This document shows, in pieces, positions 11,905 through 28,673 of a stretch of DNA of 64,000 nucleotides. The notes beneath the pieces were generated by a model. It ran no database searches. It was not told the origin of the DNA and saw only the letters and a list, made by a program, of their open reading frames with translations. Every line of letters begins with the position of its first letter. The first letter of the stretch is position 1. This stretch comes from Phaeosaccion multiseriatum (taxonomy: Eukaryota > Protista > Ochrophyta, other classes). The stretch covers positions 1,798,001 to 1,862,000 of the forward strand of contig OZ218961.1 in assembly GCA_965112735.1 (NCBI GenBank), read 5' to 3'. A program made the position numbers and the translations under genes.

Positions 11905-17742
<5,838 letters not shown>

Positions 17743-18650
17743 CATCACAGGTGGAGAACCAACCCTCTCTTCCGTATTGTGTTGTAAGCCCACAAAGCTT
17801 CGCATCTCCTCGCTGGGTGGGCCCTCGCTCGGGTGATGTGAACGTTTCATGGTCTTGATGTCTTGATGGAGGCCCTCTTCCGTCGACGCTTCGGGCTCTC
17901 TCCCCTCGGTTAGGAGGTCATGCTAAGCTGTGGCGTTGATGACACGGGTGCCCTCCCTCTGCGCTCTCCGTGAAGGAGTATGGTCTATGCCTGAGATTGC
18001 TTGGATGCTTGGCAACGCAGCTGACCGCCAGACTGTCAACGGTCTCCGAGTAACCGTCAGATGACATGATGGTATGTATGCCCACAAATGTTGGATATAT
18101 GAGGGCGGCCACTCTCCTTCTCGGTGCCACCACTACCATGAGCCATCGCTGAGGCCTTCTCTGAGGCTCTCTATCATCAGATGGCAGTAGATGGCAGCAC
18201 ACGGCATTAGAAACTACTATGGTAGTAGGGATGGCAGCAGATGCTTTGCTACACAAAGTGGAAGCAGGGAGGAGCATATGTCAAGGGCTTTTAGCAGTGC
18301 TCGGCTCTGCTTCCCTACCTCTGCTGCTGAGCAAACCCCGCCATGCCATTGACATGTGGACACACAAACGGCTGCACACACCAAACACCTTCGGAGCAAG
18401 TCGACACGACGGGCTCCTCTCGCGCGGTTTCAGTCCGCTGCTCGTCTTCGGATCAGACCACCTCCCTTTCTCCTCTTGGCTCTCTCTCTCTCTCCCTCTC
18501 TTTTCACCGACACAAATGACACAACAGTGTTACATTGTATTAACTAAAACGACAGAGAGAGGTCAGCGGCTGCTCTCTTCCGTCTATTCAGATGCTCATA
18601 TGCTCATCCGCAATCTTTCTAGTAGGTGCTCATCTGCTATCTGTTTCTGT

Positions 18651-19295
18651 CTAGTACGTCTGGACGGGGTCCATGACCTGGAATTGGGCCACGCTGTTCC
18701 CTCGTACCACGATGGTACCCATGTTCTTCGTCTGAGTGGGTAAGGGGGGGAGAGTGGTGGGTGTGTGGGTGAGGGAGAGAGGGAGGGAGGGGGGGAGGGA
18801 GTGAGTGGCGTAGTGACAGGAGGTTAGGGACACGAAGAAAAGCAAGAGGGGGATATGGGAGGCAAGGAGTGAAGTCAGTGTGGAAGCGAAAGAAAGAGAC
18901 CAACGCCCGGTACAAGGGCAGCATCCCTTCGAAACAAGTCGTCTGAGAGCAAACAAAGGGGGCGACCAAGAGCTAAGACTGCTTCATCCAACGCCTTCAT
19001 CTTTTTCGTGCGTGCGTAGGCCCTTCATCATAAGTGCGTGCAACTCTTTTATCTTGCCATACGTTGCTGGCTTACATGTGCTGCTCCTTCGTGTGTGTAC
19101 CTCCTCCTCCTCCACCCCCTCACCCCATCTCTTCTCCCTTACCTCCGATGTGGTCACGTCAAACGCCTCCTCGAGCACGAGGTTCATGAACTGGTCGTAC
19201 CCTCTCAGTAAGCCCTTTACTGAGCGGTTCCCATTGAGCTTCAGGATCAGGTTTTTGTCCATGAAACGCTTAAGATCAGGCCCCCCTCGCGCCAT
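18651..19295 (-). CDS. SNRPG: Small nuclear ribonucleoprotein G (SmG)
   Basis: Exons 19295-19143 and 18731-18651 give [43 protein letters not shown]...[11 protein letters not shown], i.e. the Sm1 and Sm2 motifs typical of SmG. Confidence 0.93.
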
Positions 19296-19915
19296 CTTGA
19301 GCGATCTGCTCTCCTCCTCCCCCTACTCCTCCTCCTCCTCTCGCTGTTGCTGCTGGTGCTGCTGCTGGTGCTGCTGCTGCTGCTTCTTCTTCTTTTGAGT
19401 CTTCTTCTTCTTCTTCTTCTTCTTCTTCTCCTGCTGCTGCTGCTGCTAGCGTCTGCAGGGTATCGACAGAGCGACAGGGGAGGAGCACGAAGCAAAGGGT
19501 GTCAGCGTTGCAGCGGGAGAGGGAAAGCGCCCAGTGCAAGCGCAGCAACTCTTTGCAGCCAATCAGTCAGCCAGGCACACGCATCTGCGAAGAAGGACGG
19601 CAAGGTAGACATGGCCACGAGAGGGAAATGCCGCTCTGGGAAAGGCCCCTCTCATCCCCACCCGTGAAACCAGTCAAGTCTCGGCGCACGCCGCTCTACG
19701 AAGATGGAGAAGAAACGCTGCATTACACAAGCGATCACCCCCCTCCAGGCCCCCTTATCATCCACCTCACCTTCTCTTGCTGCTCCTCAGCTTGAGTAGG
19801 CTCTCAAAGAGAAATCGGATATACGCCCTTTTCCTACCAAGTGTCAGGACCCAAAATGGTGTCAGGACGAGGTTTCGCCCATCACAGAGAGGGAAAGAGA
19901 GAGAGAGAAAGAAAG

Positions 19916-21215
19916 ATGGCAGGACTACTGCAGAAGGTGTACCAGACTGGGCTCGGCAGGGCGTCCGGGTGGTACCGTGGATGGATGTGCTCTCGTCTTA
20001 AGCCGTACGGTAAGTTGGGGGCAAGGATCAAGAGTAGTGACGCGAGGGTAGAGAGGAGAGAGAGGAGGGGAGTGAGGGAGGGTTGGAATACGGGCTGGTC
20101 CTCATCTCGGTGATATCTCTAAGCTCTTCGGAGTGCGGGGGATTGCTCAGGACGGGATGCGCAGCCCAGCCAGCCACCAGTCGCTGGAATGGAACCCCCT
20201 CGCCCACTCCCCTCTCCCGTCTTCTCTCCCTCTCTCTCTCCCCTCTCTCATTCAGTGCATCAAGTCCTCTTCTCCCTATCTACGCAGACTATGATTGTAT
20301 CGCCAGCGCAATAGCTTCCGCCCTTGGAGCTGCTATTGTTGGTTCCCTCCTTCTCAAACAGCACCTCATCCCTCTTCCCCCGCACGCCTCGTGACTGTCG
20401 ATGCTTTCAATCCCCCACCCCCTGCTGTGAGCAGGTTTACAGGTGGAGGACCTGTACGACCCCCTTGACTGCCCCGTCACAGCGGAGGCGCTTAAGAGGT
20501 AAGATTTCCTGCTTCCAGAGCCTCGCAGCCCCAAAATGACCGCGACTAGTGCGTGTGGGTCTCGTCTGCGAGAAGCCAAACACCCTGGGACAGGACAGAA
20601 GATCCTTCACTTTGCCCCAGTCTCCATTCTCACCAGCCCGCTTCCTTGCACCCGAATCCACATCCAACGCCCCCTGTCTCTCTGCTTTGCCCGCTGGCGC
20701 CAGATTGACTCCTACCGAGGCCAACGACCGCAACCGTCGAATTTTGAGAGCGATTGACTGCAGCTACAAGCGAAAGATGCTGCCAGAGTCTTTCCAAGAG
20801 ACATTCGACCCTTTTGCCAAGGTACGAAGAAGGATAAGGGAGGCTCTTTGAGGAAGAGAGGAGGACCCCTAGACTGCACTATTGAGTCAGGAGTCAGGAA
20901 AGCAGTGGGGGGGTCCTCTTACTTGTGTGTGGGGGGGCTGCTGTGTTTCAACAATCCATTCCAGGGTGGTCCTTCTATTACTAGTGCTGTCACATCGAGG
21001 GAAGAAGGAAGGAGAGCGCTGCTTGTCCTCGCCTAGAGAGAGACAAGCGACGAGGCAATCGGTGCGCAGCGGCAGTCAAGCAATCTGACGCGGATACCCC
21101 ATCCTATGCCCCCCCGTGTCCACACACACAGCCTTACCTGCAGAAACACATTGAGGCAATCGAGAAGGAGAAGGCGGAGAGGCTCGCAGTCAACAAGACT
21201 TACTCGGATGTTTAA
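19916..21215 (+). CDS. QCR7: Cytochrome b-c1 complex subunit 7
   Basis: Four exons give ...LKPYGLQVEDLYDP...EALKRLTPTEANDRNRRILRAIDCSYKRKMLP...PYLQKHIEAIEKEKAER..., matching the UCR_14kD family pattern. Confidence 0.88.
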
Positions 21216-22079
21216 TGATGATGTACACATTTAGAAGGCGGCATGGCCGATTGCCGATGGTGGAGCAGGAGGGAGGGAGGGAGGGAGGGAAGGAGGGAGG
21301 AAGGGCCGCGGGCGGCGAAGGAGGGGTGGATTGGCATCAAGAACGAGGGGGTCGACTCGCTCGACTTGTGAAGGAGTGGGGGTACGTACATGTTGAGAGA
21401 GAGAGAGAGGAGGGCGACCATTTTGTTCGTTAAAATAAATGTATCTGACTGAGTATGGTGTCGGACAGAAAGTAAAAAAAAGTGTCGTGTATGGCATTCA
21501 TTGTTCATCACATTGATTTTGTTTTTTGGGGTTGAGATGGGCAAAGAAAAGTGAAAGTTGTTGCTTGTATGTTGTGCATCTTTGCACCACGTCATCATTT
21601 GAGACACGCCAAACAAAGCTTAACAAAGCTTGGTCTTGTTTCTTCTTCCCTTCCCCCCAAGTGACTCTATAAGCAGCCAAGAGCAGCAGCAACTAAGCAG
21701 AGCAGTGGAGCACCGCACAAAAGGCGTGCGCTTCCTCCTCCTCCTCCTCCTCCTCCTCCTCCTCTCGAGCCTGGTCCTTCATAACTCACTGACTGACTTG
21801 ACCAGTCCGTCGCTATTCATCCTCTCAGACTGACTGACTGATTGACTGACCGACTTGACTGGTCCTGAGTGAGTGTTTGTGGTGACACTCCGTTCACGCC
21901 CCTCCGAGTTTCTCCCGAGTCCTTAAGCCTAGAGGGTCCTCTCTCTCTTTGCAAGAACAGGACGGGACGAGTCACAAGCTCCTCGCATCTATGCCTCCAT
22001 ATATATAATATATATATATATTATATATATATATTATATACATATATATGTGTGTGTGTAAGTTTATGTAACTGCATGC

Positions 22080-22660
22080 GCCGGCTGCCTGTAGACGTTG
22101 GATGCCTTTGATCGGGGAGGGGAGAGGGGAGAGCGAGAAAATTGGTGAGGAAGGATGAAAGGGTGGGGGGAGATGTGACGAGGGAGGAAGGAGGGCGTAA
22201 TGAGGAAATACCATTGATTGCAAACACTGCGATCATACTGTTAAGAGAGGGGGCAAAGGGGGAAATGAGGAGATGGAAGTGAAAAGAAATGTCGAATGGG
22301 GTCTTTACGCTCACGGGGCGAGAACCCCGAGGGGGACTTGGGCACACCGTCGCTATATTTACCACCTGTTTCTCTGGGCTGTCCAGTAGCGCTGCAGAGC
22401 CAAGGGGGAGGGCTGAGCAGTGACTCTAAAAAGGCAGCCGCACACAAAGGCAAAAGACAATCAATAAATCAACAATCCCAGAAATCCCACATACAAGTTG
22501 GGGCCCAAATGATCACCGGGTTGCTCCCCTCCTCACACAAGCCAACACGCGCGCTCACTCACTCCCTTAGTTAGTTACTCACCGAGAATCGTCACCACGC
22601 CGCATAGACTTGGGCGACACAGAGCTCATAGAAGGCCTTCATGCCATGTTCTCCTTCGCC
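22080..22660 (-). pseudogene. Decayed duplicate of the carrier gene's exon4-intron-exon5 unit
   Basis: AAGGCCTTCTA...GTCTATGCGGCGTGGTG...G|GTGAGT (donor 22582) resembles the real AAGGCCTTCTA...GTCTGTGCAGCGTGGTG...G|GTGAGT. AG|GCATCCAA (acceptor 22106) resembles the real AG|GTATCCAA. The reading frame is disrupted. Confidence 0.65.
22287..22441 (-). ncRNA. Putative box H/ACA snoRNA, copy A (inside a duplicated intron downstream of the carrier stop codon)
   Basis: The minus strand folds as hairpin (GGCTG...CAGCC), then H box AGAGAA (22375-22370), then hairpin (CGGGG-TTCTCG-CCCCG apex), then ACA-TTT (22292-22287). It is 181/182 identical to copy B. Confidence 0.6.
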
Positions 22661-22775
22661 AGACATCAAAAAAGACATGTGTAGAAGGAAGAGTGGTATG
22701 CCGAAAGCCCGCTACTCCCTCACTCCCTCCCTCCCTTGTATGGAGAGGTTAGCAGAACATACCAGGGTTCAGCAC

Positions 22776-25367
22776 TTAACGCGCCGGAGCGCCTCTCCCC
22801 GCACCCTGCTTCTGCTGATACTGTGTGATGAAGGTGATCAAATCCGCCACCGCCGTGGGCGTCTGTCTGTCCTCCCTAAGCAAGAGAAGCCTCTCCCTCT
22901 CCTCCTCCAACATCAGCTGCTCACTCTTGGTCATCCTCTTCCTCTTTTCACCCTTGCCCTTACCCTTGCTGGTGCTGCTGGCTGGTGCTGGCAATGCCCC
23001 CTTGCGAGGGAGGAGCACCGGGGAGGAGCTGGCACCCTCTCTGGACAGGAGGCCCTGCCCCGACAAAGCCCCGACGCTCGCCTTGTGCTCTCTGTCGGCC
23101 TCCTGCCTCGCTCGAAGGCCGATGAGCCGCTTCTTTGAAGCCTCGTAAATGCCGAATTGGATACCTGGAGGAGGAGGAGGAGGAGGAGGGGGAGGGGAAG
23201 AGGAAGGAAGAGGAGGAGGAGAAGAAGGAGGGGTGAGTAATGCACTGGATTGCGCACGGTACTTAGGAGGGGGGGGGTGAGTGAGAGGAGATGGAAGTGA
23301 AAAGAAATGTCGAATGGGGTCTTTACGCTCACGGGGCGAGAACCCCGAGGGGGACTTGGGCACACCGTCGCTATATTTACCACCTGTCTCTCTGGGCTGT
23401 CCAGTAGCGCTGCAGAGCCAAGGGGGAGGGCTGAGCAGTGACTCTAAAAAGGCAGCCGCACACAAACGCAGTCCCAAGGCAATCCCATCGTGTGAACTCC
23501 CCCCTCACCCAAGCCCCCACGCACTCCCTCCCTCCCTCCGTCCCTCACACACCAACCACCCCCCCCCCCCTCCCTCCCACACTCACTCACCCATCATAGG
23601 CACCACGCTGCACAGACGAGGCAGAAGGGACCGGTAGAAGGCCTTGACGCCCTCCTCCTTGGCGACTTTGCGGATGCAGTCCACCACTCCCTTGTAGGCC
23701 AAGTTACCCGCCTGCACCATGGTGGATATGCATTAACGAAGGATGGGTTTTTAAAAACAGGTTAGCGGTGGTGGAAAGGGGAACGGGTGACGGAGGTACT
23801 TGCGTTAGGTAATAAACTTCCGCGGTGTCTCAAGGTTCACGTTGCCGTATGGTTCATGTGTATGCTCATGTTGCATCGCACCTCGTCTGCTACTTGTGTA
23901 ACGATGCGTGTCTTGACCGTGTCCAGCGGGATCATGAGACACACGGTGGCCCCCGCCCCTGCCGCCCCGAGCAAAAAGTTCTCCGTATCTGTGGCCTTTC
24001 GACCCGTCTTGCGAAAGTGAAGCTCCTTGAATTGCTGGAAGAAGACCCAAGTGAGGCTGTAGCTCGGGATCTTTTGCACCAGGGAGGCGCTCCAGCCGCG
24101 GTAGAAGCCAGCTACCCCTTGCTCTCGGGCGATGGTGCGGACTCCGGTGAATAGGTTGGGGTACACACCTGAGAGAGTGAGTGAGGGAGGGAGAGGGAGA
24201 GAGTGAGAGGGAGCGAAGTGAGTGAGTCAGTGAGTGAGTGAGTGAGTGGGGGAGTGAGTGAGGGAGGGAGTGCGTGAGGTAGTGCGTGAGAGGAGAGAAT
24301 GGAGTGTGAGGAGTGAGTGTGATGAGTGAGAAGCGTGAGTAAGTGAGATGAGAAGACCCCCCTCTCTATCTGTACCTCTGTCTATCTATATGTATACCCA
24401 GAGCTCTCTCTCTCTCTCTTTGTCACTCACCAGCCATGATTCGATCCGTGATTACCATCTGCGGAGTGCTAACTACCGAGCAGATGGTAGTGGCCACTGC
24501 TGAGCTGAAGAAGTCCACAAGGAAGCCCGCCTTGCCCTCGCAGGGCACATATTTGGAGGTTAAGTCCTTCACTGCCTCCACCGTCGCGAAGCTGAAGGCT
24601 CCGTGCGGCAGGGAGAGGATGAATTGAGCCCCCGCGCCTCGGGTGAGGGTCTTGAAGATGGTACGAGAGGTGAGGGAGCTGAGCTGTTGAGCGGTGTCCT
24701 TGCCCTGCAGGAGCGTCTTGACCACGTTCAAGGGTTGCATGACTGCGGTGGGGGGTTGAATGGGGGCAGGCAAGAGGAGCAGCAGGAGGAGGACCAATAT
24801 AGGGAGAGACGTGAGTGAGCGGGGTTCCTCCAGCTTCAAGGCAGCCCCTTGCGCAACCGTACAATTCGTTCTAGGGTGCCTCTGCCTACTACCCACCCCG
24901 AGTCCCGGCTACTAAAGCATGTGCATCCTCGCGGTGGCGAAGGTCTCACCTGTCTGCGCCACACTCCGCGAGACTGCTCCGGCAATCATGGAGTCGAAGA
25001 AGGACACATGAGTCTGCGCTCCCTCCACACGCTTCCCCTTTTTGGAAGCCGGCGGTGCAGGAGGCAGCAAGACCTCCACCTCCTCCTTGCTTGTTCGCTG
25101 CTTCAATTGCTGTCGCAGCCCTCCCCACTGTTGCCGGCCCCATCCCCTGAGCATCTCTCCCGACCCCTGTGAACCCTCAGACCTGCTCCTTTTGTGAGGC
25201 AGTTGCGTGGTGGTGGATAGGACCGGCACACTTCTGCCCAGCGCCCCTGGGATGGAAGAGGCAGCTCCAACGAACGCAAGCATCACTCCAGGAAGCAGCA
25301 TCGCCACCCTCGCTCTCTTCGTACGGCTGCGCCGAGGCCTCACACGCTCTGAAGCGTTGGAACTCAT
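22776..25367 (-). CDS. Mitochondrial carrier family (SLC25) protein, SAM-carrier/MFL1-like, with N-terminal extension (possibly plastid-targeted)
   Basis: Five exons with three carrier repeats: QPLNVVKT, TPQMVITD..GVAGFYRG, IPLDTVKTR..YKGVVDCIRKVAKEEGVKAFYR..IQFGIYE. The start could be 25367 or 25301 (MLLPGVMLAFVGAASS looks like a signal peptide). Confidence 0.85.
23305..23459 (-). ncRNA. Putative box H/ACA snoRNA, copy B (in the last intron, 23590-23165, of the carrier gene)
   Basis: Same sequence as copy A except one base, which changes the H box to AGAGAG. It is intronic and in the sense orientation of the host gene. Confidence 0.55.
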
Positions 25368-26170
25368 GTCGAACAAAATCCTGCTTGCGGGGTTCCTGTC
25401 CACCGCAAAGCAGCAGCGGTAGCAGTAGCACACCTATCTATATTGATGGACCCCACCAACGCCTCTCTTCCCCCCACCACACGCCTTTTTTCCGGAAATA
25501 TGAGGTTTGCTCTTTGAGAACCACAAACACAGGCGCTCGAGGAAGGAGAGAAGGCTTCTCCTCCTTCTTCGGCGGGGAAGACTCTTCGACCTTATCCAGT
25601 AGAGAGCTGAGTTCAAGTCGCGATGAAGAGTGGAAGGAGTGGAAGGGGAGAAAGAGAAGCCAAGCTGTGGCTGTGGGGTTGATTGAAAGGTGTGTGCCGT
25701 TTTGCGAGGGCAAAAAACTGAAAGTTCGTACGTACCCGCAAGACCCCCCCGGCCCTCCGCGGCCGTGGGGAATATTCGAAGTGCCCCCGCTCTCGCTCTC
25801 CCTTCTCTGCCCCCCCTTTGCTCTTGTGCAGCTTGCTGTATGGAGGTCAGAGGAATAAGACGGTCGAGATATTTGAATCTCCCTTTTTTATTTCTTCTCG
25901 AGTCTTGGCTCCAGAAATAACAGAGACAATGAAAGAGGAGGAGGGGAAGAAAAGACCCCACGACTCAAGCACTTCTGCCGCTTGCTTGAGCAGTATGCCT
26001 GTCGAAGTCCTTTTGGGAGCTTTGATCCACTCAACAGCAAGGGTGAGAAAGGGAGGAAGAGGGGGAGGGAGAGAGAGAGAGACGGCAGACAAGAGATGGA
26101 AAGAGGCAGCGTAGAGGCGAAGGCAAGGAACTGAGGAGAAGCGAAGAGAGCAAGTGGAGGCGGATGCAAG

Positions 26171-28673
26171 ATGCAACGGAAAATCCCCTCCAAACTCTTC
26201 TTGTCCCTCCTTCCCTCAGCCCCTTTCCTCCTCCGTTGCGCCACCGAGCAGGACCTGCGTGCGCTGTCGTGCGTGTGCAAGCAAGAGCCTGGGAACTCCT
26301 CTTTCCCTGACGCTCGAGCCTGTAGTCGCGCAGCAGGTAAGACTAGAGGACAAAATAGCTCCTGTTGACCAGTGTTAGCCCCTTTTAGCCCCTATTTCCT
26401 CGCTACGAGGCCATCTCTTCTCCCCACTAATTAACTTGCCTTCCTCCCTCCTCTCTTGCCCAGATCTGCTCCTATTATGGGCGGAGTAGCCCCCGTCTTC
26501 GAGCCGACTGCCCAAAGTGGCGAAGGTCCTTGGACACTCTTCGCGTCGCTGAGCTTCAGCACATCAGCTGGATGCTCAGCAGGGGAGGGGACGCCACAGT
26601 GGGCTACTGGGTGAGACAGAGTGAAGACGATGCTCTCCGTTCTTTTTCACGTATGCAATTGTACTTCTACCGTTCTACCCTTGCTTTGTCTTGACCATGA
26701 AGCCTGACCTCTTCCAACGGCACCGGTACCTTCACAGGTGAGCCGGACTTGGAGCCAAAACCTGAGGCGCTATGCGGAGGGAGAGAGTCGCCGGCAGCAG
26801 CAGCAGCAGGAGCAGGAGCAGCAGCAGGAGAAGAAGAAGCTCGTTGGTGGCAGCGGCGGGCCGAAGGTCTCTCCTCAAAAGCCGAAGCGGGGCAGGCTCA
26901 GAACGGGTAAGCGGTGGCTGGCTGCTTCCATTCATTCATACTGAGGCCCCCCTTTCTCTTTGGACTCTTTGCCCGGACTAACTACCTCACTCACTCACTC
27001 ACTCACTCACTCACTGCCTCGCTTACCGATTGCAGAGAGCAACGTGATGCCTCCCTGGCCCAACGCCAATGAGGACATTCAGTGCTCCGTGCATGGCGGC
27101 CTGCGAGGCAGGGGGAGGCAGGCTGCGTCAGACCCAAACGCTTCCCCCTTCAAGGTGAAGCGGAATGCTGTGGAGGTTCCAGTATGGGAAGCATTGCGGC
27201 GGCTCTTCCCGAACAGTACCCCCTTCGAGGTGCGGTCCAGCGGCGCACGTGGGGCCAGACTTGCTTACAAACCAGAAGAAAGGGAAATGGCACAACGATT
27301 GGTGCTTCATCTTGGGTCCTGACACTCACTCTTGAGTCTGTCTCATTCTCATTCATTCATCTCGATAGATAGATATCCTATACCCTCTCACTCACCACGG
27401 CCTTGTCTGATTGCTTGCCGTCTGTCCTGTCTCACCTCGCTCGGCTGTGACTAACTGCTTTTGGTTCGCAGACAAGGGAGGGGCCGTGCGCGGGCTGCGG
27501 CGACAAGAAAGCAGCAGCCAAGGCTGTTGAGGAGAAGGTGCGTGCAGGCATGTAGGTGTATGGGCAGGCAGGCTAGAGACAGGCAGACAGATAGATAGAC
27601 AGGCAGGCAGTAGATTGAAACGCATGCATGCGTGTGTTTCCATCACCTCTTTATCTTTGAGGTTCTTCTACACGTCCCTCAAGGCATCTCTCTGTGGGGC
27701 GCTGCCATACCTCCCTCAAATCTCCCTCTCCCTCTCTCCGGTTGCCCACCCCTCACTCGCTCCCTCCCTCCCTCCCTCCCTCTCCCCCCTCCTCCCTCTC
27801 CCTCCGTCCCTCTCCTTCCCTCGTCCCTCCTCCCTCCCTGCTGGATGTGGGTGCACAGGTTCTTGAGAGCCGCCTTGTGGAGATTCAGCACCCCATTCTC
27901 AGAAAGCTCGCCTCTCGGAAGGGAGGAGTGCCCCCCTGGGCCTTACGTAGCAGCAGCAGCAGCAGCAGCAGCAGCGGTGACGCAAGCTCCACCCCTACCG
28001 CCGCCGGAGTAGCAGATGCAGCAGGGGCAGGGCTCTTCTCGCTCCTGCCGGGTATATACCAGCTGGTGCCTCGGTGCTTCCTGCAGGCCTGGAGAGGTTA
28101 CCTCAAGGACCCGAGGGCTCCTCTCCCACACATGCTAGACTTGTCCATGTTTCTCTGTGAGGGCCATGGCTTACTGCTTGTGCCTCCCCACTTGGAGGAG
28201 TGGCTGAGTGGGGAGAGAAGGAGTCTGCTCTCGGGCCGTACGGAAGACAGGTGAGTGGCAATTGATGGGGAGGGGAGGTGGAGGGGAAGAGAGGTGGCAT
28301 GGTAGTGGATGGGGAGGGGGTGACATGATCAGAGAGAGAGAGGGAGAGAGAGAGCAATGAAGGAGGCGCTGCGACGGCTCCAACCCCCCCCCCCCTTCCC
28401 CTCCCTTTCCCTACCCGCCTGGTGTTGTGTGGCGTTCTGGTGTCGTGGTGCTCTTCTCCAATCTCCCGCAGTGGCGTGGCGTGCGAGATTGTAACCGACG
28501 AGGAGTGGGAGAGGCTGACTCAGCTGTACGCGTGTGAGCTCGGCGTGCGCTTCCTCATCCCTCCTGAGAGGCATGAGAGCGTACAGTGGAGCGTACAGCG
28601 CTGCTTGCGGTGCCACTCCGGCTACATTGGGGACATACTCGACACGTGCAAGAGTCGAAAGGCGTCCTTCTGA
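26171..28673 (+). CDS. F-box-like N-terminus plus tandem USP48-type DUSP domains, with no catalytic USP domain; 5' structure unresolved
   Basis: 'DLRALSCVCKQ' is F-box-like. DUSP1: 'YWVSRTWSQNLRRY..NEDIQCSVHGGL..VWEALRRLFP..CAGC'. DUSP2: 'YQLVPRCFLQAWRGY..FLCEGHGLL..VTDEEWERLTQLY..CLRC'. An in-frame TAG lies at 26487-26489 in the simplest splice model. Confidence 0.62.

What the first reader, a model, noticed from the sequence alone, without database searches (positions are those of the whole stretch)
22080..23640. Duplicated exon-intron-exon unit in which only an intronic snoRNA-like core (and the splice sites) survived
Seen: 22267-22448 and 23285-23466 match at 181 of 182 bases. Both lie inside homologous introns (23590-23165 in the CDS; 22582-22106 downstream of the stop). 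The duplicated flanking exon sequence has decayed heavily, with indels and a stop, but the GTGAGT donor and AG acceptor are intact. Inference: selection or gene conversion preserves an intron-encoded RNA, and the duplicated exons have become non-coding host exons in the 3' UTR. This would be a snapshot of the birth of a non-coding snoRNA host intron.
Basis: partly seen in the sequence, partly recalled or inferred. Interest (0 to 1): 0.75.

Follow-up and report, generated by a model that had tools for sequence, protein, structure and literature searches.

The report
Duplicated intronic H/ACA snoRNA copy
A 155-base small guide RNA of the box H/ACA type sits in an intron of an algal mitochondrial-carrier gene and again just after the gene's stop codon. 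The second copy lies in a decayed duplicate of that intron, and the RNA part has stayed almost identical, an ordinary way for such RNA genes to multiply.

Summary
Window 22267-22448 and 23285-23466 match at 181 of 182 bases, and identity collapses at both ends.

The flank on the 5' side of the RNA is truly homologous: exon end, GTGAGT donor and start of the intron (z = 15.6). It has decayed to 45-61% identity, with an indel and a stop codon.

The core is best read as a 155-nt box H/ACA snoRNA on the gene's strand:
- It has two hairpins and an H box.
- Its ACA lies exactly 3 nt before conservation ends.

The genome holds only five copies. All are sense-oriented in introns of four unrelated genes (carrier twice, E1 dehydrogenase, DHHC, aconitase). 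Changes cluster in the upper stem and loops, with one compensatory pair.

The A/B identity runs 27 nt past the unit shared with the other copies. This favours gene conversion on top of selection. The single A/B difference removes the last A of the H box in the coding-intron copy.

No target is statistically supported. The rRNA hits, helix 69 included, are at chance level. U2 snRNA U41 is the best lead (10 of 500 shuffles).

Splicing of the 3'-UTR copy could not be tested. Earlier notes of this scan describe similar duplicated intronic snoRNAs elsewhere in this genome. This is a new member of a known kind, of modest interest.

The parts
23305..23459 (-). snoRNA copy A, 155-nt box H/ACA-like unit (GCGGCUG...ACAUUU) inside the last CDS intron of the mitochondrial-carrier gene
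   Evidence: Alignments A2/A3; covariance model R1 scores 208 bits
22287..22441 (-). snoRNA copy B, the same 155-nt unit inside the duplicated pseudo-intron downstream of the stop codon
   Evidence: R1 scores 209.6 bits
23285..23466 (-). A-side identity tract (181/182 to B). It extends 7 nt 5' and 20 nt 3' beyond the snoRNA unit
22267..22448 (-). B-side identity tract
23388..23393 (-). Hinge (H) box of copy A, AGAGAG. The last position is G instead of the consensus A (ANANNA not met)
22370..22375 (-). H box of copy B, AGAGAA (fits ANANNA). The three other paralogues have AGAGCA
23308..23310 (-). ACA box of copy A, 3 nt before the end of family-wide conservation
22290..22292 (-). ACA box of copy B
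23165..23590 (-). Host intron A (GTGAGT...CAG). It splits the codon GGT between ...PMMG and IQFGIY... of the sixth carrier helix
22106..22582 (-). Pseudo-intron B (GTGAGT...AAG), homologous to intron A. Splicing not tested
22583..22650 (-). Decayed duplicate of the end of the penultimate coding exon (61% identity, indel, in-frame TGA at 22594-22592)
22776..23164 (-). Last coding exon of the carrier gene, with stop TAA at 22778-22776. The copy-B donor lies 194 nt downstream of the stop
23591..23720 (-). Penultimate coding exon (Mito_carr, E = 5e-08), source of the duplicated exon remnant
23885..24166 (-). Upstream carrier exon (Mito_carr, E = 1.5e-17)

Best explanation
The conserved core is a gene for a roughly 155-nt box H/ACA small nucleolar (guide) RNA, read from the window's minus strand, the same strand as its host genes. 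It belongs to a five-copy family in this stramenopile alga, and every copy lies in an intron in the sense orientation. This is the layout expected when the RNA is released from the spliced-out intron.

In this window an old segmental duplication of about 550 bp copied the end of the penultimate exon, the snoRNA intron and probably the first bases of the last exon. The copy landed about 130 nt (start of the exon remnant) to 194 nt (its splice donor) downstream of the carrier gene's stop codon.

The copied exon pieces drifted to 45-61% identity. The RNA unit stayed constrained, as it is family-wide. In addition, a short tract of gene conversion (182-186 bp) between the two neighbouring copies made them near-identical.

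The GTGAGT donor and an AG acceptor of the downstream unit survive. The most likely reading (inferred, not shown) is that it still works as a 3'-UTR or read-through intron that yields a second dose of the snoRNA.

Shown: the repeat, the flank homology and decay, the copy number, the intronic sense context, the H/ACA anatomy, and the identity tract being longer than the conserved unit.

Inferred: the RNA is stable, intron B is spliced, and what the RNA guides.
For: Repeat and boundaries:
- The two copies match at 181/182 and identity breaks abruptly at both ends.
- Flank homology has z = 15.6. Identity is 61% and 45% in the flanks against 154/155 in the unit.

Copy number and context:
- Only five copies exist in the genome by BLAST and by covariance model. 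No third decayed copy lies nearby.
- All five lie in introns, in the sense orientation. The hosts are Mito_carr (twice), E1_dh, DHHC and aconitase.

H/ACA anatomy:
- Family-wide conservation starts at GCGGCUG (four copies share five more bases upstream). It stops exactly at ACA+3 in the C3 copies and 2 nt later in the C1 copy.
- The hinge carries AGAGCA or AGAGAA (ANANNA).
- Each half folds as one hairpin with a lower stem, an internal pocket and an upper stem.
- The pocket tops lie 14-16 nt upstream of H and of ACA (sequence).

Variation:
- All 30 modelled pairs are kept in all five copies. One pair is compensatory (A-U to G-C) and one changes U-A to U-G.
- G-U pairs fit only the minus strand.
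- The divergent C1 copy differs almost only in the upper stem and the loops. The pocket strands and the boxes are invariant, apart from one A-to-U change at the lower-stem end of the 3' pocket strand of hairpin 1.

Other:
- There is a weak Rfam resemblance of the 5' hairpin to SNORA3/45 (14 bits, E = 1.7), sharing the pocket words and the H box.
- The A/B identity continues for 27 nt outside the unit, where the other paralogues are about 60% alike. At 65% background identity this has a chance of about 9e-6, which supports conversion.
Against: - No RNA evidence of any kind was available.
- No Rfam family reaches its threshold.
- Folding energies are not better than shuffles (z = -0.3 to -1.8).
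- Covariation rests on one divergent copy. The shuffle control is weak (93/500).
- No target is statistically supported. The best rRNA hits for hairpin 1 are matched by 63/100 and 114/200 shuffles.
- Copy A lacks a perfect H box.
- The copy-B acceptor is AAG, weaker than CAG or TAG.
- Homology on the 3' side is weak (z = 3.1).
- No relatives' DNA could be examined.
Confidence: 0.62

Rival explanations
1. The core is a real H/ACA snoRNA, but copy B is a dead by-product. It lies beyond the carrier's polyadenylation site or is not spliced. It looks perfect only because a recent gene conversion from copy A (or from B to A) overwrote it. No new host intron is being born.
For: - The identity tract is longer than the functional unit, as expected from conversion and not from selection on B.
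- The copy-B acceptor is AAG, and homology on the 3' side is barely detectable.
- A spliced intron about 194 nt after a stop codon would usually expose an mRNA to nonsense-mediated decay (general knowledge).
Against: - The seven-base donor G|GTGAGT is intact in a flank that is otherwise about 60% identical (roughly 0.03 by chance).
- The pyrimidine tract and the intron length (477 vs 426 nt) are kept.
- Copy B, not A, carries the canonical H box.
Confidence: 0.3
2. The core is not an RNA gene. It is a low-copy dispersed repeat or fragment of a mobile element that happens to sit in introns and is homogenised by conversion.
For: - No Rfam hit reaches threshold.
- No significant fold energy.
- No supported target.
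- In one copy (L004) an 8-nt direct repeat brackets a 182-nt segment.
Against: - Only five copies exist.
- There are no terminal inverted repeats, no consistent target-site duplications and no A-tails.
- All copies are sense-oriented in introns.
- Conservation ends at ACA+3, and the hinge holds an H box.
- Variation is confined to the upper stem and loops, with one compensatory pair.
Confidence: 0.08
3. The family is a helix-69 guide (snR191/U19-like) for large-subunit rRNA, as another first-stage note on this window proposes.
For: The hairpin-1 pocket pairs 7 bp (UGACUCU) 3' of LSU U2252 and 5 bp with one mismatch 5' of it. By my recollection of yeast numbering, this site corresponds to yeast 25S psi2258.
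Against: - The score (11) is below the mean best score of shuffled rRNA (11.5-11.8).
- LSU U2410 (3 bp on the 5' side and 8 pairs on the 3' side, one of them G-U) and SSU U152 score similarly.
- There is an A-C mismatch next to the target.
- Another locus (G000 C1:1745260-1745470) has 9+8 nt complementarity bracketing the UAUG of helix 69, with a flanking stem and an H-box-like hinge. A single hit to that 16-base pattern is, however, what chance predicts.
Confidence: 0.12

Closest known systems
Intron-encoded box H/ACA snoRNAs (e.g. the vertebrate SNORA families; Rfam SNORA3/SNORA45, RF00334, is the nearest model)
   Same: - Hairpin-hinge-hairpin-tail layout of about 155 nt.
- H box ANANNA and ACA 3 nt from the end.
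- Pockets 14-16 nt upstream of the boxes.
- Sense orientation inside introns of protein-coding genes.
- The 5' pocket words AGAGUCA / GCUA and the H box AGAGAA also occur in the SNORA3 consensus.
   Different: - The Rfam score is 14 bits against a gathering score of 51, so it is not a member by that test.
- The 3' hairpin has no match.
- No convincing rRNA target.
- The hosts are metabolic and mitochondrial genes, not ribosome-related genes.
Repeated non-coding exon/intron units that each host one snoRNA (SNORD115/SNORD116 arrays downstream of SNURF-SNRPN; non-coding hosts such as GAS5 and UHG). From general knowledge
   Same: A snoRNA-bearing intron flanked by exons with no coding value, lying downstream of a coding region. 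Only the snoRNA and the splice signals are conserved.
   Different: - Here there is a single extra unit, not an array.
- The RNA is of the H/ACA class, not C/D.
- The unit's origin from the host's own coding exons is still visible.
- Splicing is not shown.
Intragenomic mobility and paralogue spread of snoRNAs (snoRNA retroposons and duplicated intronic cassettes). From general knowledge, and from earlier notes of this scan on the same genome
   Same: Near-identical cores sit in introns of unrelated genes, with unalignable flanks.
   Different: No poly(A) tails and no consistent target-site duplications. The mechanism of spread is open.
snR81 of yeast and scaRNA-type H/ACA guides for U2 snRNA pseudouridines. 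From general knowledge
   Same: The hairpin-1 pocket can pair with this alga's U2 around U41: 8 contiguous pairs 3' of it and 6 pairs with one mismatch 5' of it. This is the position of human psi41 / yeast psi42. 10 of 500 shuffles reach this score.
   Different: - Three guide bases would stay unpaired under the upper stem.
- There is no CAB box in the apical loops.
- Support is marginal and came after several other target sets had been tried.

Membership tests
Box H/ACA snoRNA | Two hairpins joined by a single-stranded hinge and followed by a short tail | tested here: met
   Each half folds into one hairpin. 30 modelled pairs are kept in all five copies.
Box H/ACA snoRNA | H box ANANNA in the hinge | tested here: met
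   AGAGCA in three copies and AGAGAA in copy B. Copy A has AGAGAG and fails at position 6.
Box H/ACA snoRNA | ACA exactly 3 nt from the 3' end | tested here: inconclusive
   Family-wide conservation ends at ACA+3 in two paralogues and at ACA+5 in the third. The true RNA end is unknown without RNA data.
Box H/ACA snoRNA | Internal pocket whose top lies 14-16 nt upstream of the H or ACA box | tested here: met
   The 3' pocket strands start 14-16 nt before A72 (H) and before A155 (ACA) in the numbering of alignment A3.
Box H/ACA snoRNA | Bipartite complementarity to an rRNA or snRNA uridine | tested here: inconclusive
   rRNA hits are at chance level. ITS1 position 75 for hairpin 2 is reached by 5/200 shuffles. 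U2 U41 for hairpin 1 is reached by 10/500 shuffles.
Box H/ACA snoRNA | Stable RNA bound by Cbf5/dyskerin, Nop10, Nhp2 and Gar1 | not testable with these tools
   No expression or binding data.
Box H/ACA snoRNA | Structure supported by covariation | tested here: inconclusive
   One compensatory pair and one wobble change, both from one divergent copy. The shuffle control gives 93/500.
Rfam SNORA3/SNORA45 (RF00334) | Score at or above the family's gathering threshold (51 bits) | tested here: not met
   14.1 bits, E = 1.7, 5' hairpin only. Nothing at gathering thresholds in the whole window.
Non-coding snoRNA host intron in a 3' UTR | Lies downstream of the stop codon and its flanking exons do not code | tested here: met
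   The donor is 194 nt after TAA (22778-22776). The exon remnant has an indel and a TGA.
Non-coding snoRNA host intron in a 3' UTR | Splice signals present | tested here: met
   G|GTGAGT donor, pyrimidine tract, AAG|G acceptor (a CAG lies 16 nt further on).
Non-coding snoRNA host intron in a 3' UTR | Transcribed with the host and actually spliced | not testable with these tools
   No RNA-seq. The next minus-strand gene (Sm-like) is about 2.8 kb further on, so no other gene claims the region.
Transposable element (MITE/SINE/retroposed snoRNA) | Terminal inverted repeats, target-site duplications or A-tails; many copies | tested here: not met
   Five copies. No TIRs, A-tails or consistent TSDs. 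One 8-nt direct repeat in L004 only.

The most novel reading that the evidence does not exclude
The family is an snR81/scaRNA-like guide for U2 snRNA U41 in a stramenopile. It is kept in five intronic copies by conversion. The decayed duplicate behind the carrier's stop codon is a spliced 3'-UTR intron, so that making the extra snoRNA dose exposes the carrier mRNA to nonsense-mediated decay. This would be a caught-in-the-act step from a coding host to a non-coding host.
Probability: 0.1. Interest if true: 0.5.

Novelty: new member of a known kind. Interest (0 to 1): 0.3.

Why it matters
It gives a clean, datable example of how an intronic snoRNA gains a second copy. The host's own exon-intron-exon unit is duplicated, the exon parts decay, and the RNA plus splice signals are kept.

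It also shows short-tract gene conversion acting on the RNA core, and a possible functional hand-over, since the H-box defect is in the 'original' copy.

For annotation, it adds a five-copy H/ACA family and its hosts to a poorly annotated algal lineage. It also warns that the helix-69 target assigned to this RNA by another first-stage note on this window is no better than chance.

None of this changes current understanding of snoRNA biology.

Tried and rejected
- **Rfam at gathering thresholds:** nothing on the whole window. In E-value mode only a sub-threshold SNORA3 hit appeared. Papers naming SNORA3/SNORA45 gave no usable target; SNORA45 is listed as an orphan in PMC1636440.
- **Plus-strand RNA:** rejected, because the G-U pairs and the U-A to U-G change fit only the minus strand.
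- **Target search in rRNA:** several pocket registers were compared with dinucleotide shuffles and came out at chance.
- **Perfect-complement search of the whole genome:** no hit.
- **Search for better dedicated guides:** one plausible candidate for helix 69 (L030) and one chance hit in an exon for LSU U2410 (L031).
- **snRNA targets:** U1, U2 and U6 were found and scanned. U5 was not found by the family search.
- **Relatives:** two pattern scans of metagenome contigs gave 0 hits and 15 hits. None of the 15 matched model R1, so they are chance matches.
- **Third decayed copy near 21800:** hinted by a 22-nt repeat and rejected by the model search with filters off.
- **Transposon reading:** rejected on copy number and the lack of terminal features.
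- **Spliced model:** the host gene's exons were searched one by one by reference. They were not joined into a spliced protein.
Full report
**Observation.** The repeat finder reports the pair as 186 nt at 99%. At the same offset of 1018 bases, identity drops to background directly outside both ends. Read on the minus strand, the region is the 3' end of a mitochondrial-carrier gene. Three exon pieces match Pfam Mito_carr (E = 1.5e-17, 2.4e-07 and 5e-08). I searched the exons one by one by reference and did not join them.

The last CDS intron runs 23590-23165 (GTGAGT...CAG). It splits ...PMMG|IQFGIY..., and the stop codon TAA is at 22778-22776.

**Is the surrounding unit really duplicated?** The flank on the 5' side of the RNA is homologous beyond doubt. 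It comprises about 70 nt of exon end, the donor and the first 70 nt or so of the intron. Its local alignment score is 34 against 10.3 +/- 1.5 for dinucleotide shuffles (z = 15.6).

The 3' flank is C/T-rich and only weakly alignable (z = 3.1). A short AGGYATCCAA match at the acceptor is suggestive and no more.

Identity by segment is as follows:

| Segment | Identity |
|---|---|
| Exon remnant | 61% |
| 5' part of the intron | 45% |
| RNA unit | 154/155 |
| 3' part of the intron | 50% |

The exon remnant of the downstream copy has an indel and an in-frame TGA (22594-22592). Diverged flanks also exclude a simple assembly duplication.

**What the core is.** The whole 67-Mb assembly has only five copies: two here on contig 12, two on contig 3 (L003, L004) and one on contig 1 (L005). 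Over the aligned core they are 92-98% identical to the query copy. A covariance model built from them (R1) finds no further members in the genome. It also finds no decayed third copy in window 18000-27000 with filters off.

Aligned with flanks, conservation starts sharply at GCGGCUG (four copies share five more bases upstream). It ends at ACAUUU, that is ACA plus three bases, in the contig-3 copies, and two bases later in the contig-1 copy. Between two hairpin-forming halves lies AGAGCA or AGAGAA, which fits the H-box consensus ANANNA. Each half folds as one hairpin with a lower stem, an internal loop and an upper stem. The tops of the two internal loops lie 14-16 nt upstream of the H box and of the ACA box.

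All 30 base pairs of this model are kept in all five copies. One pair is compensatory (A-U to G-C) and one changes U-A to U-G. The G-U pairs would be A-C mismatches on the other strand, so the RNA is read from the minus strand, the host's strand.

The divergent contig-1 copy differs almost only in the upper stem and loops. The pocket strands and boxes are unchanged, except for one A-to-U change at the lower-stem end of the 3' pocket strand of hairpin 1. This is the anatomy and the variation pattern of a box H/ACA guide RNA.

Caveats:
- Covariation rests on one sequence (shuffle control 93/500).
- Fold energies are not better than shuffles.
- No Rfam family reaches threshold. The only hint is SNORA3/45 at 14 bits, E = 1.7. 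Its consensus shares the 5' pocket words and the H box.

**Context of the other copies.** Every copy is inside an intron and in the sense orientation:
- L003 lies between two exons of a thiamine-dependent E1 dehydrogenase (E1_dh, E = 1.5e-4, just under Pfam's cut-off).
- L004 lies in a DHHC palmitoyltransferase gene (E = 1.4e-24).
- L005 lies in an aconitase gene (E = 1.4e-29).

Outside the core the introns do not align, apart from C/T-rich tracts. There are no terminal inverted repeats, A-tails or consistent target-site duplications. One 8-nt direct repeat brackets a 182-nt segment in L004 only.

**Selection or conversion?** The family as a whole is strongly constrained, at 92-98% in the core with unalignable flanks. 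The A/B pair shows something more. Their identity continues for 7 nt upstream and 20 nt downstream of the unit shared with the other paralogues, in sequence that is only about 60% alike among those paralogues. Twenty-seven consecutive matches at 65% background identity have a chance of about 9e-6. A short gene-conversion tract of 182-186 bp between the two neighbouring copies, on top of purifying selection, is the simplest account.

The single A/B difference falls on position 6 of the H box. The outgroup copies and copy B have A, while copy A, in the coding intron, has G. The 'original' copy therefore carries the derived and probably harmful state.

**Does the downstream unit act as an intron?** This could not be tested.

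In favour:
- The seven-base donor G|GTGAGT is intact in a flank that is about 60% identical (roughly 0.03 by chance).
- The pyrimidine tract and the intron length are kept (477 against 426 nt).
- No other gene claims the region. The next minus-strand gene, Sm-like, lies about 2.8 kb on.

Against:
- The acceptor is AAG.
- An intron 194 nt behind a stop codon would normally mark the mRNA for nonsense-mediated decay.

**Target.** I extracted this genome's 18S, ITS/5.8S and 25S-type rRNA and its U1, U2 and U6 snRNAs (U5 was not found). I scanned them with both pockets in several registers against dinucleotide shuffles.
- For hairpin 1, the best rRNA hits are matched by 114/200 and 63/100 shuffles. 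They are SSU U152, LSU U933, LSU U2252 in helix 69 and LSU U2410.
- The helix-69 reading proposed in another first-stage note (s1-360523) is therefore no better than chance.
- A separate locus (L030) has 9+8 nt complementarity bracketing the UAUG of helix 69, with a fitting stem and hinge. A single hit to that pattern is, however, what chance predicts.
- Hairpin 2's best hit is in ITS1 (5/200 shuffles).
- The best lead overall is U2 snRNA U41, the position of human psi41 / yeast psi42 by my recollection of those numberings. It has 8 contiguous pairs on one side and 6 with one mismatch on the other, reached by 10/500 shuffles. Three guide bases are left unpaired under the upper stem.

I regard the target as open.

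**Relatives.** Two pattern scans of metagenome contigs gave nothing that matched model R1. Conservation in other species therefore remains untested.

**Comparison with what is known, and verdict.** Intron-encoded H/ACA snoRNAs, their spread to new host introns, and snoRNA-bearing introns flanked by non-coding exons are all established. Examples are GAS5, UHG and the SNORD115/116 units downstream of SNURF-SNRPN. Earlier notes of this scan report several duplicated intronic snoRNA cassettes in this same genome (s1-334012, s1-338407, s1-342232).

This is a tidy new example whose origin from the host's own exons is still legible. It has a nice conversion signature and an H-box twist. It is not a new kind of thing, and its key functional claims await RNA data.

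Noticed in passing
L030:1488-1697 (G000 C1:1745260-1745470, + strand): Candidate H/ACA-like RNA. The pocket strands of its 5' hairpin are complementary to 9 nt and 8 nt on either side of the UAUG in helix 69 of LSU rRNA. It has a flanking stem AAGUG..GGG/CCC..CACUU and an AAAUUA hinge at the right distance. The 3' half does not fold convincingly, and one pattern hit is what chance predicts.
   Followed up: partly
L004:1495-1693 (minus strand): In the DHHC-intron copy, an 8-nt direct repeat GTCCTTTC brackets a 182-nt segment (9 nt leader, the 156-nt unit, 17 nt trailer). This is the same length as the A/B identity tract. It is possibly an insertion footprint and possibly chance in C/T-rich sequence.
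   Followed up: partly
L032:1501-1685 (G000 C8:89234-89418): This alga's U2 snRNA reads UUCUAAAAC just after the branch-point recognition sequence, where (from memory) human U2 has UUCUUAUCAG. The A-run is what pairs with the U-run of the snoRNA's first pocket.
   Followed up: partly
window 18984-19295 (minus strand): Sm-like / snRNP G-type open reading frame (…[26 protein letters not shown]…). It is the next gene downstream of the carrier on the same strand.
   Followed up: no
window 16750-17290: Long perfect microsatellite of an 8-base unit (CTGTCTGT-type, read as SVCL/RQTD repeats in ORF listings), inside or next to a large low-complexity ORF with leucine-rich-repeat-like ends.
   Followed up: no
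G000 C4 and C3: rDNA units are dispersed singly over about 1 Mb of contig 4, in both orientations, plus one unit on contig 3. They are not in one tandem array.
   Followed up: no
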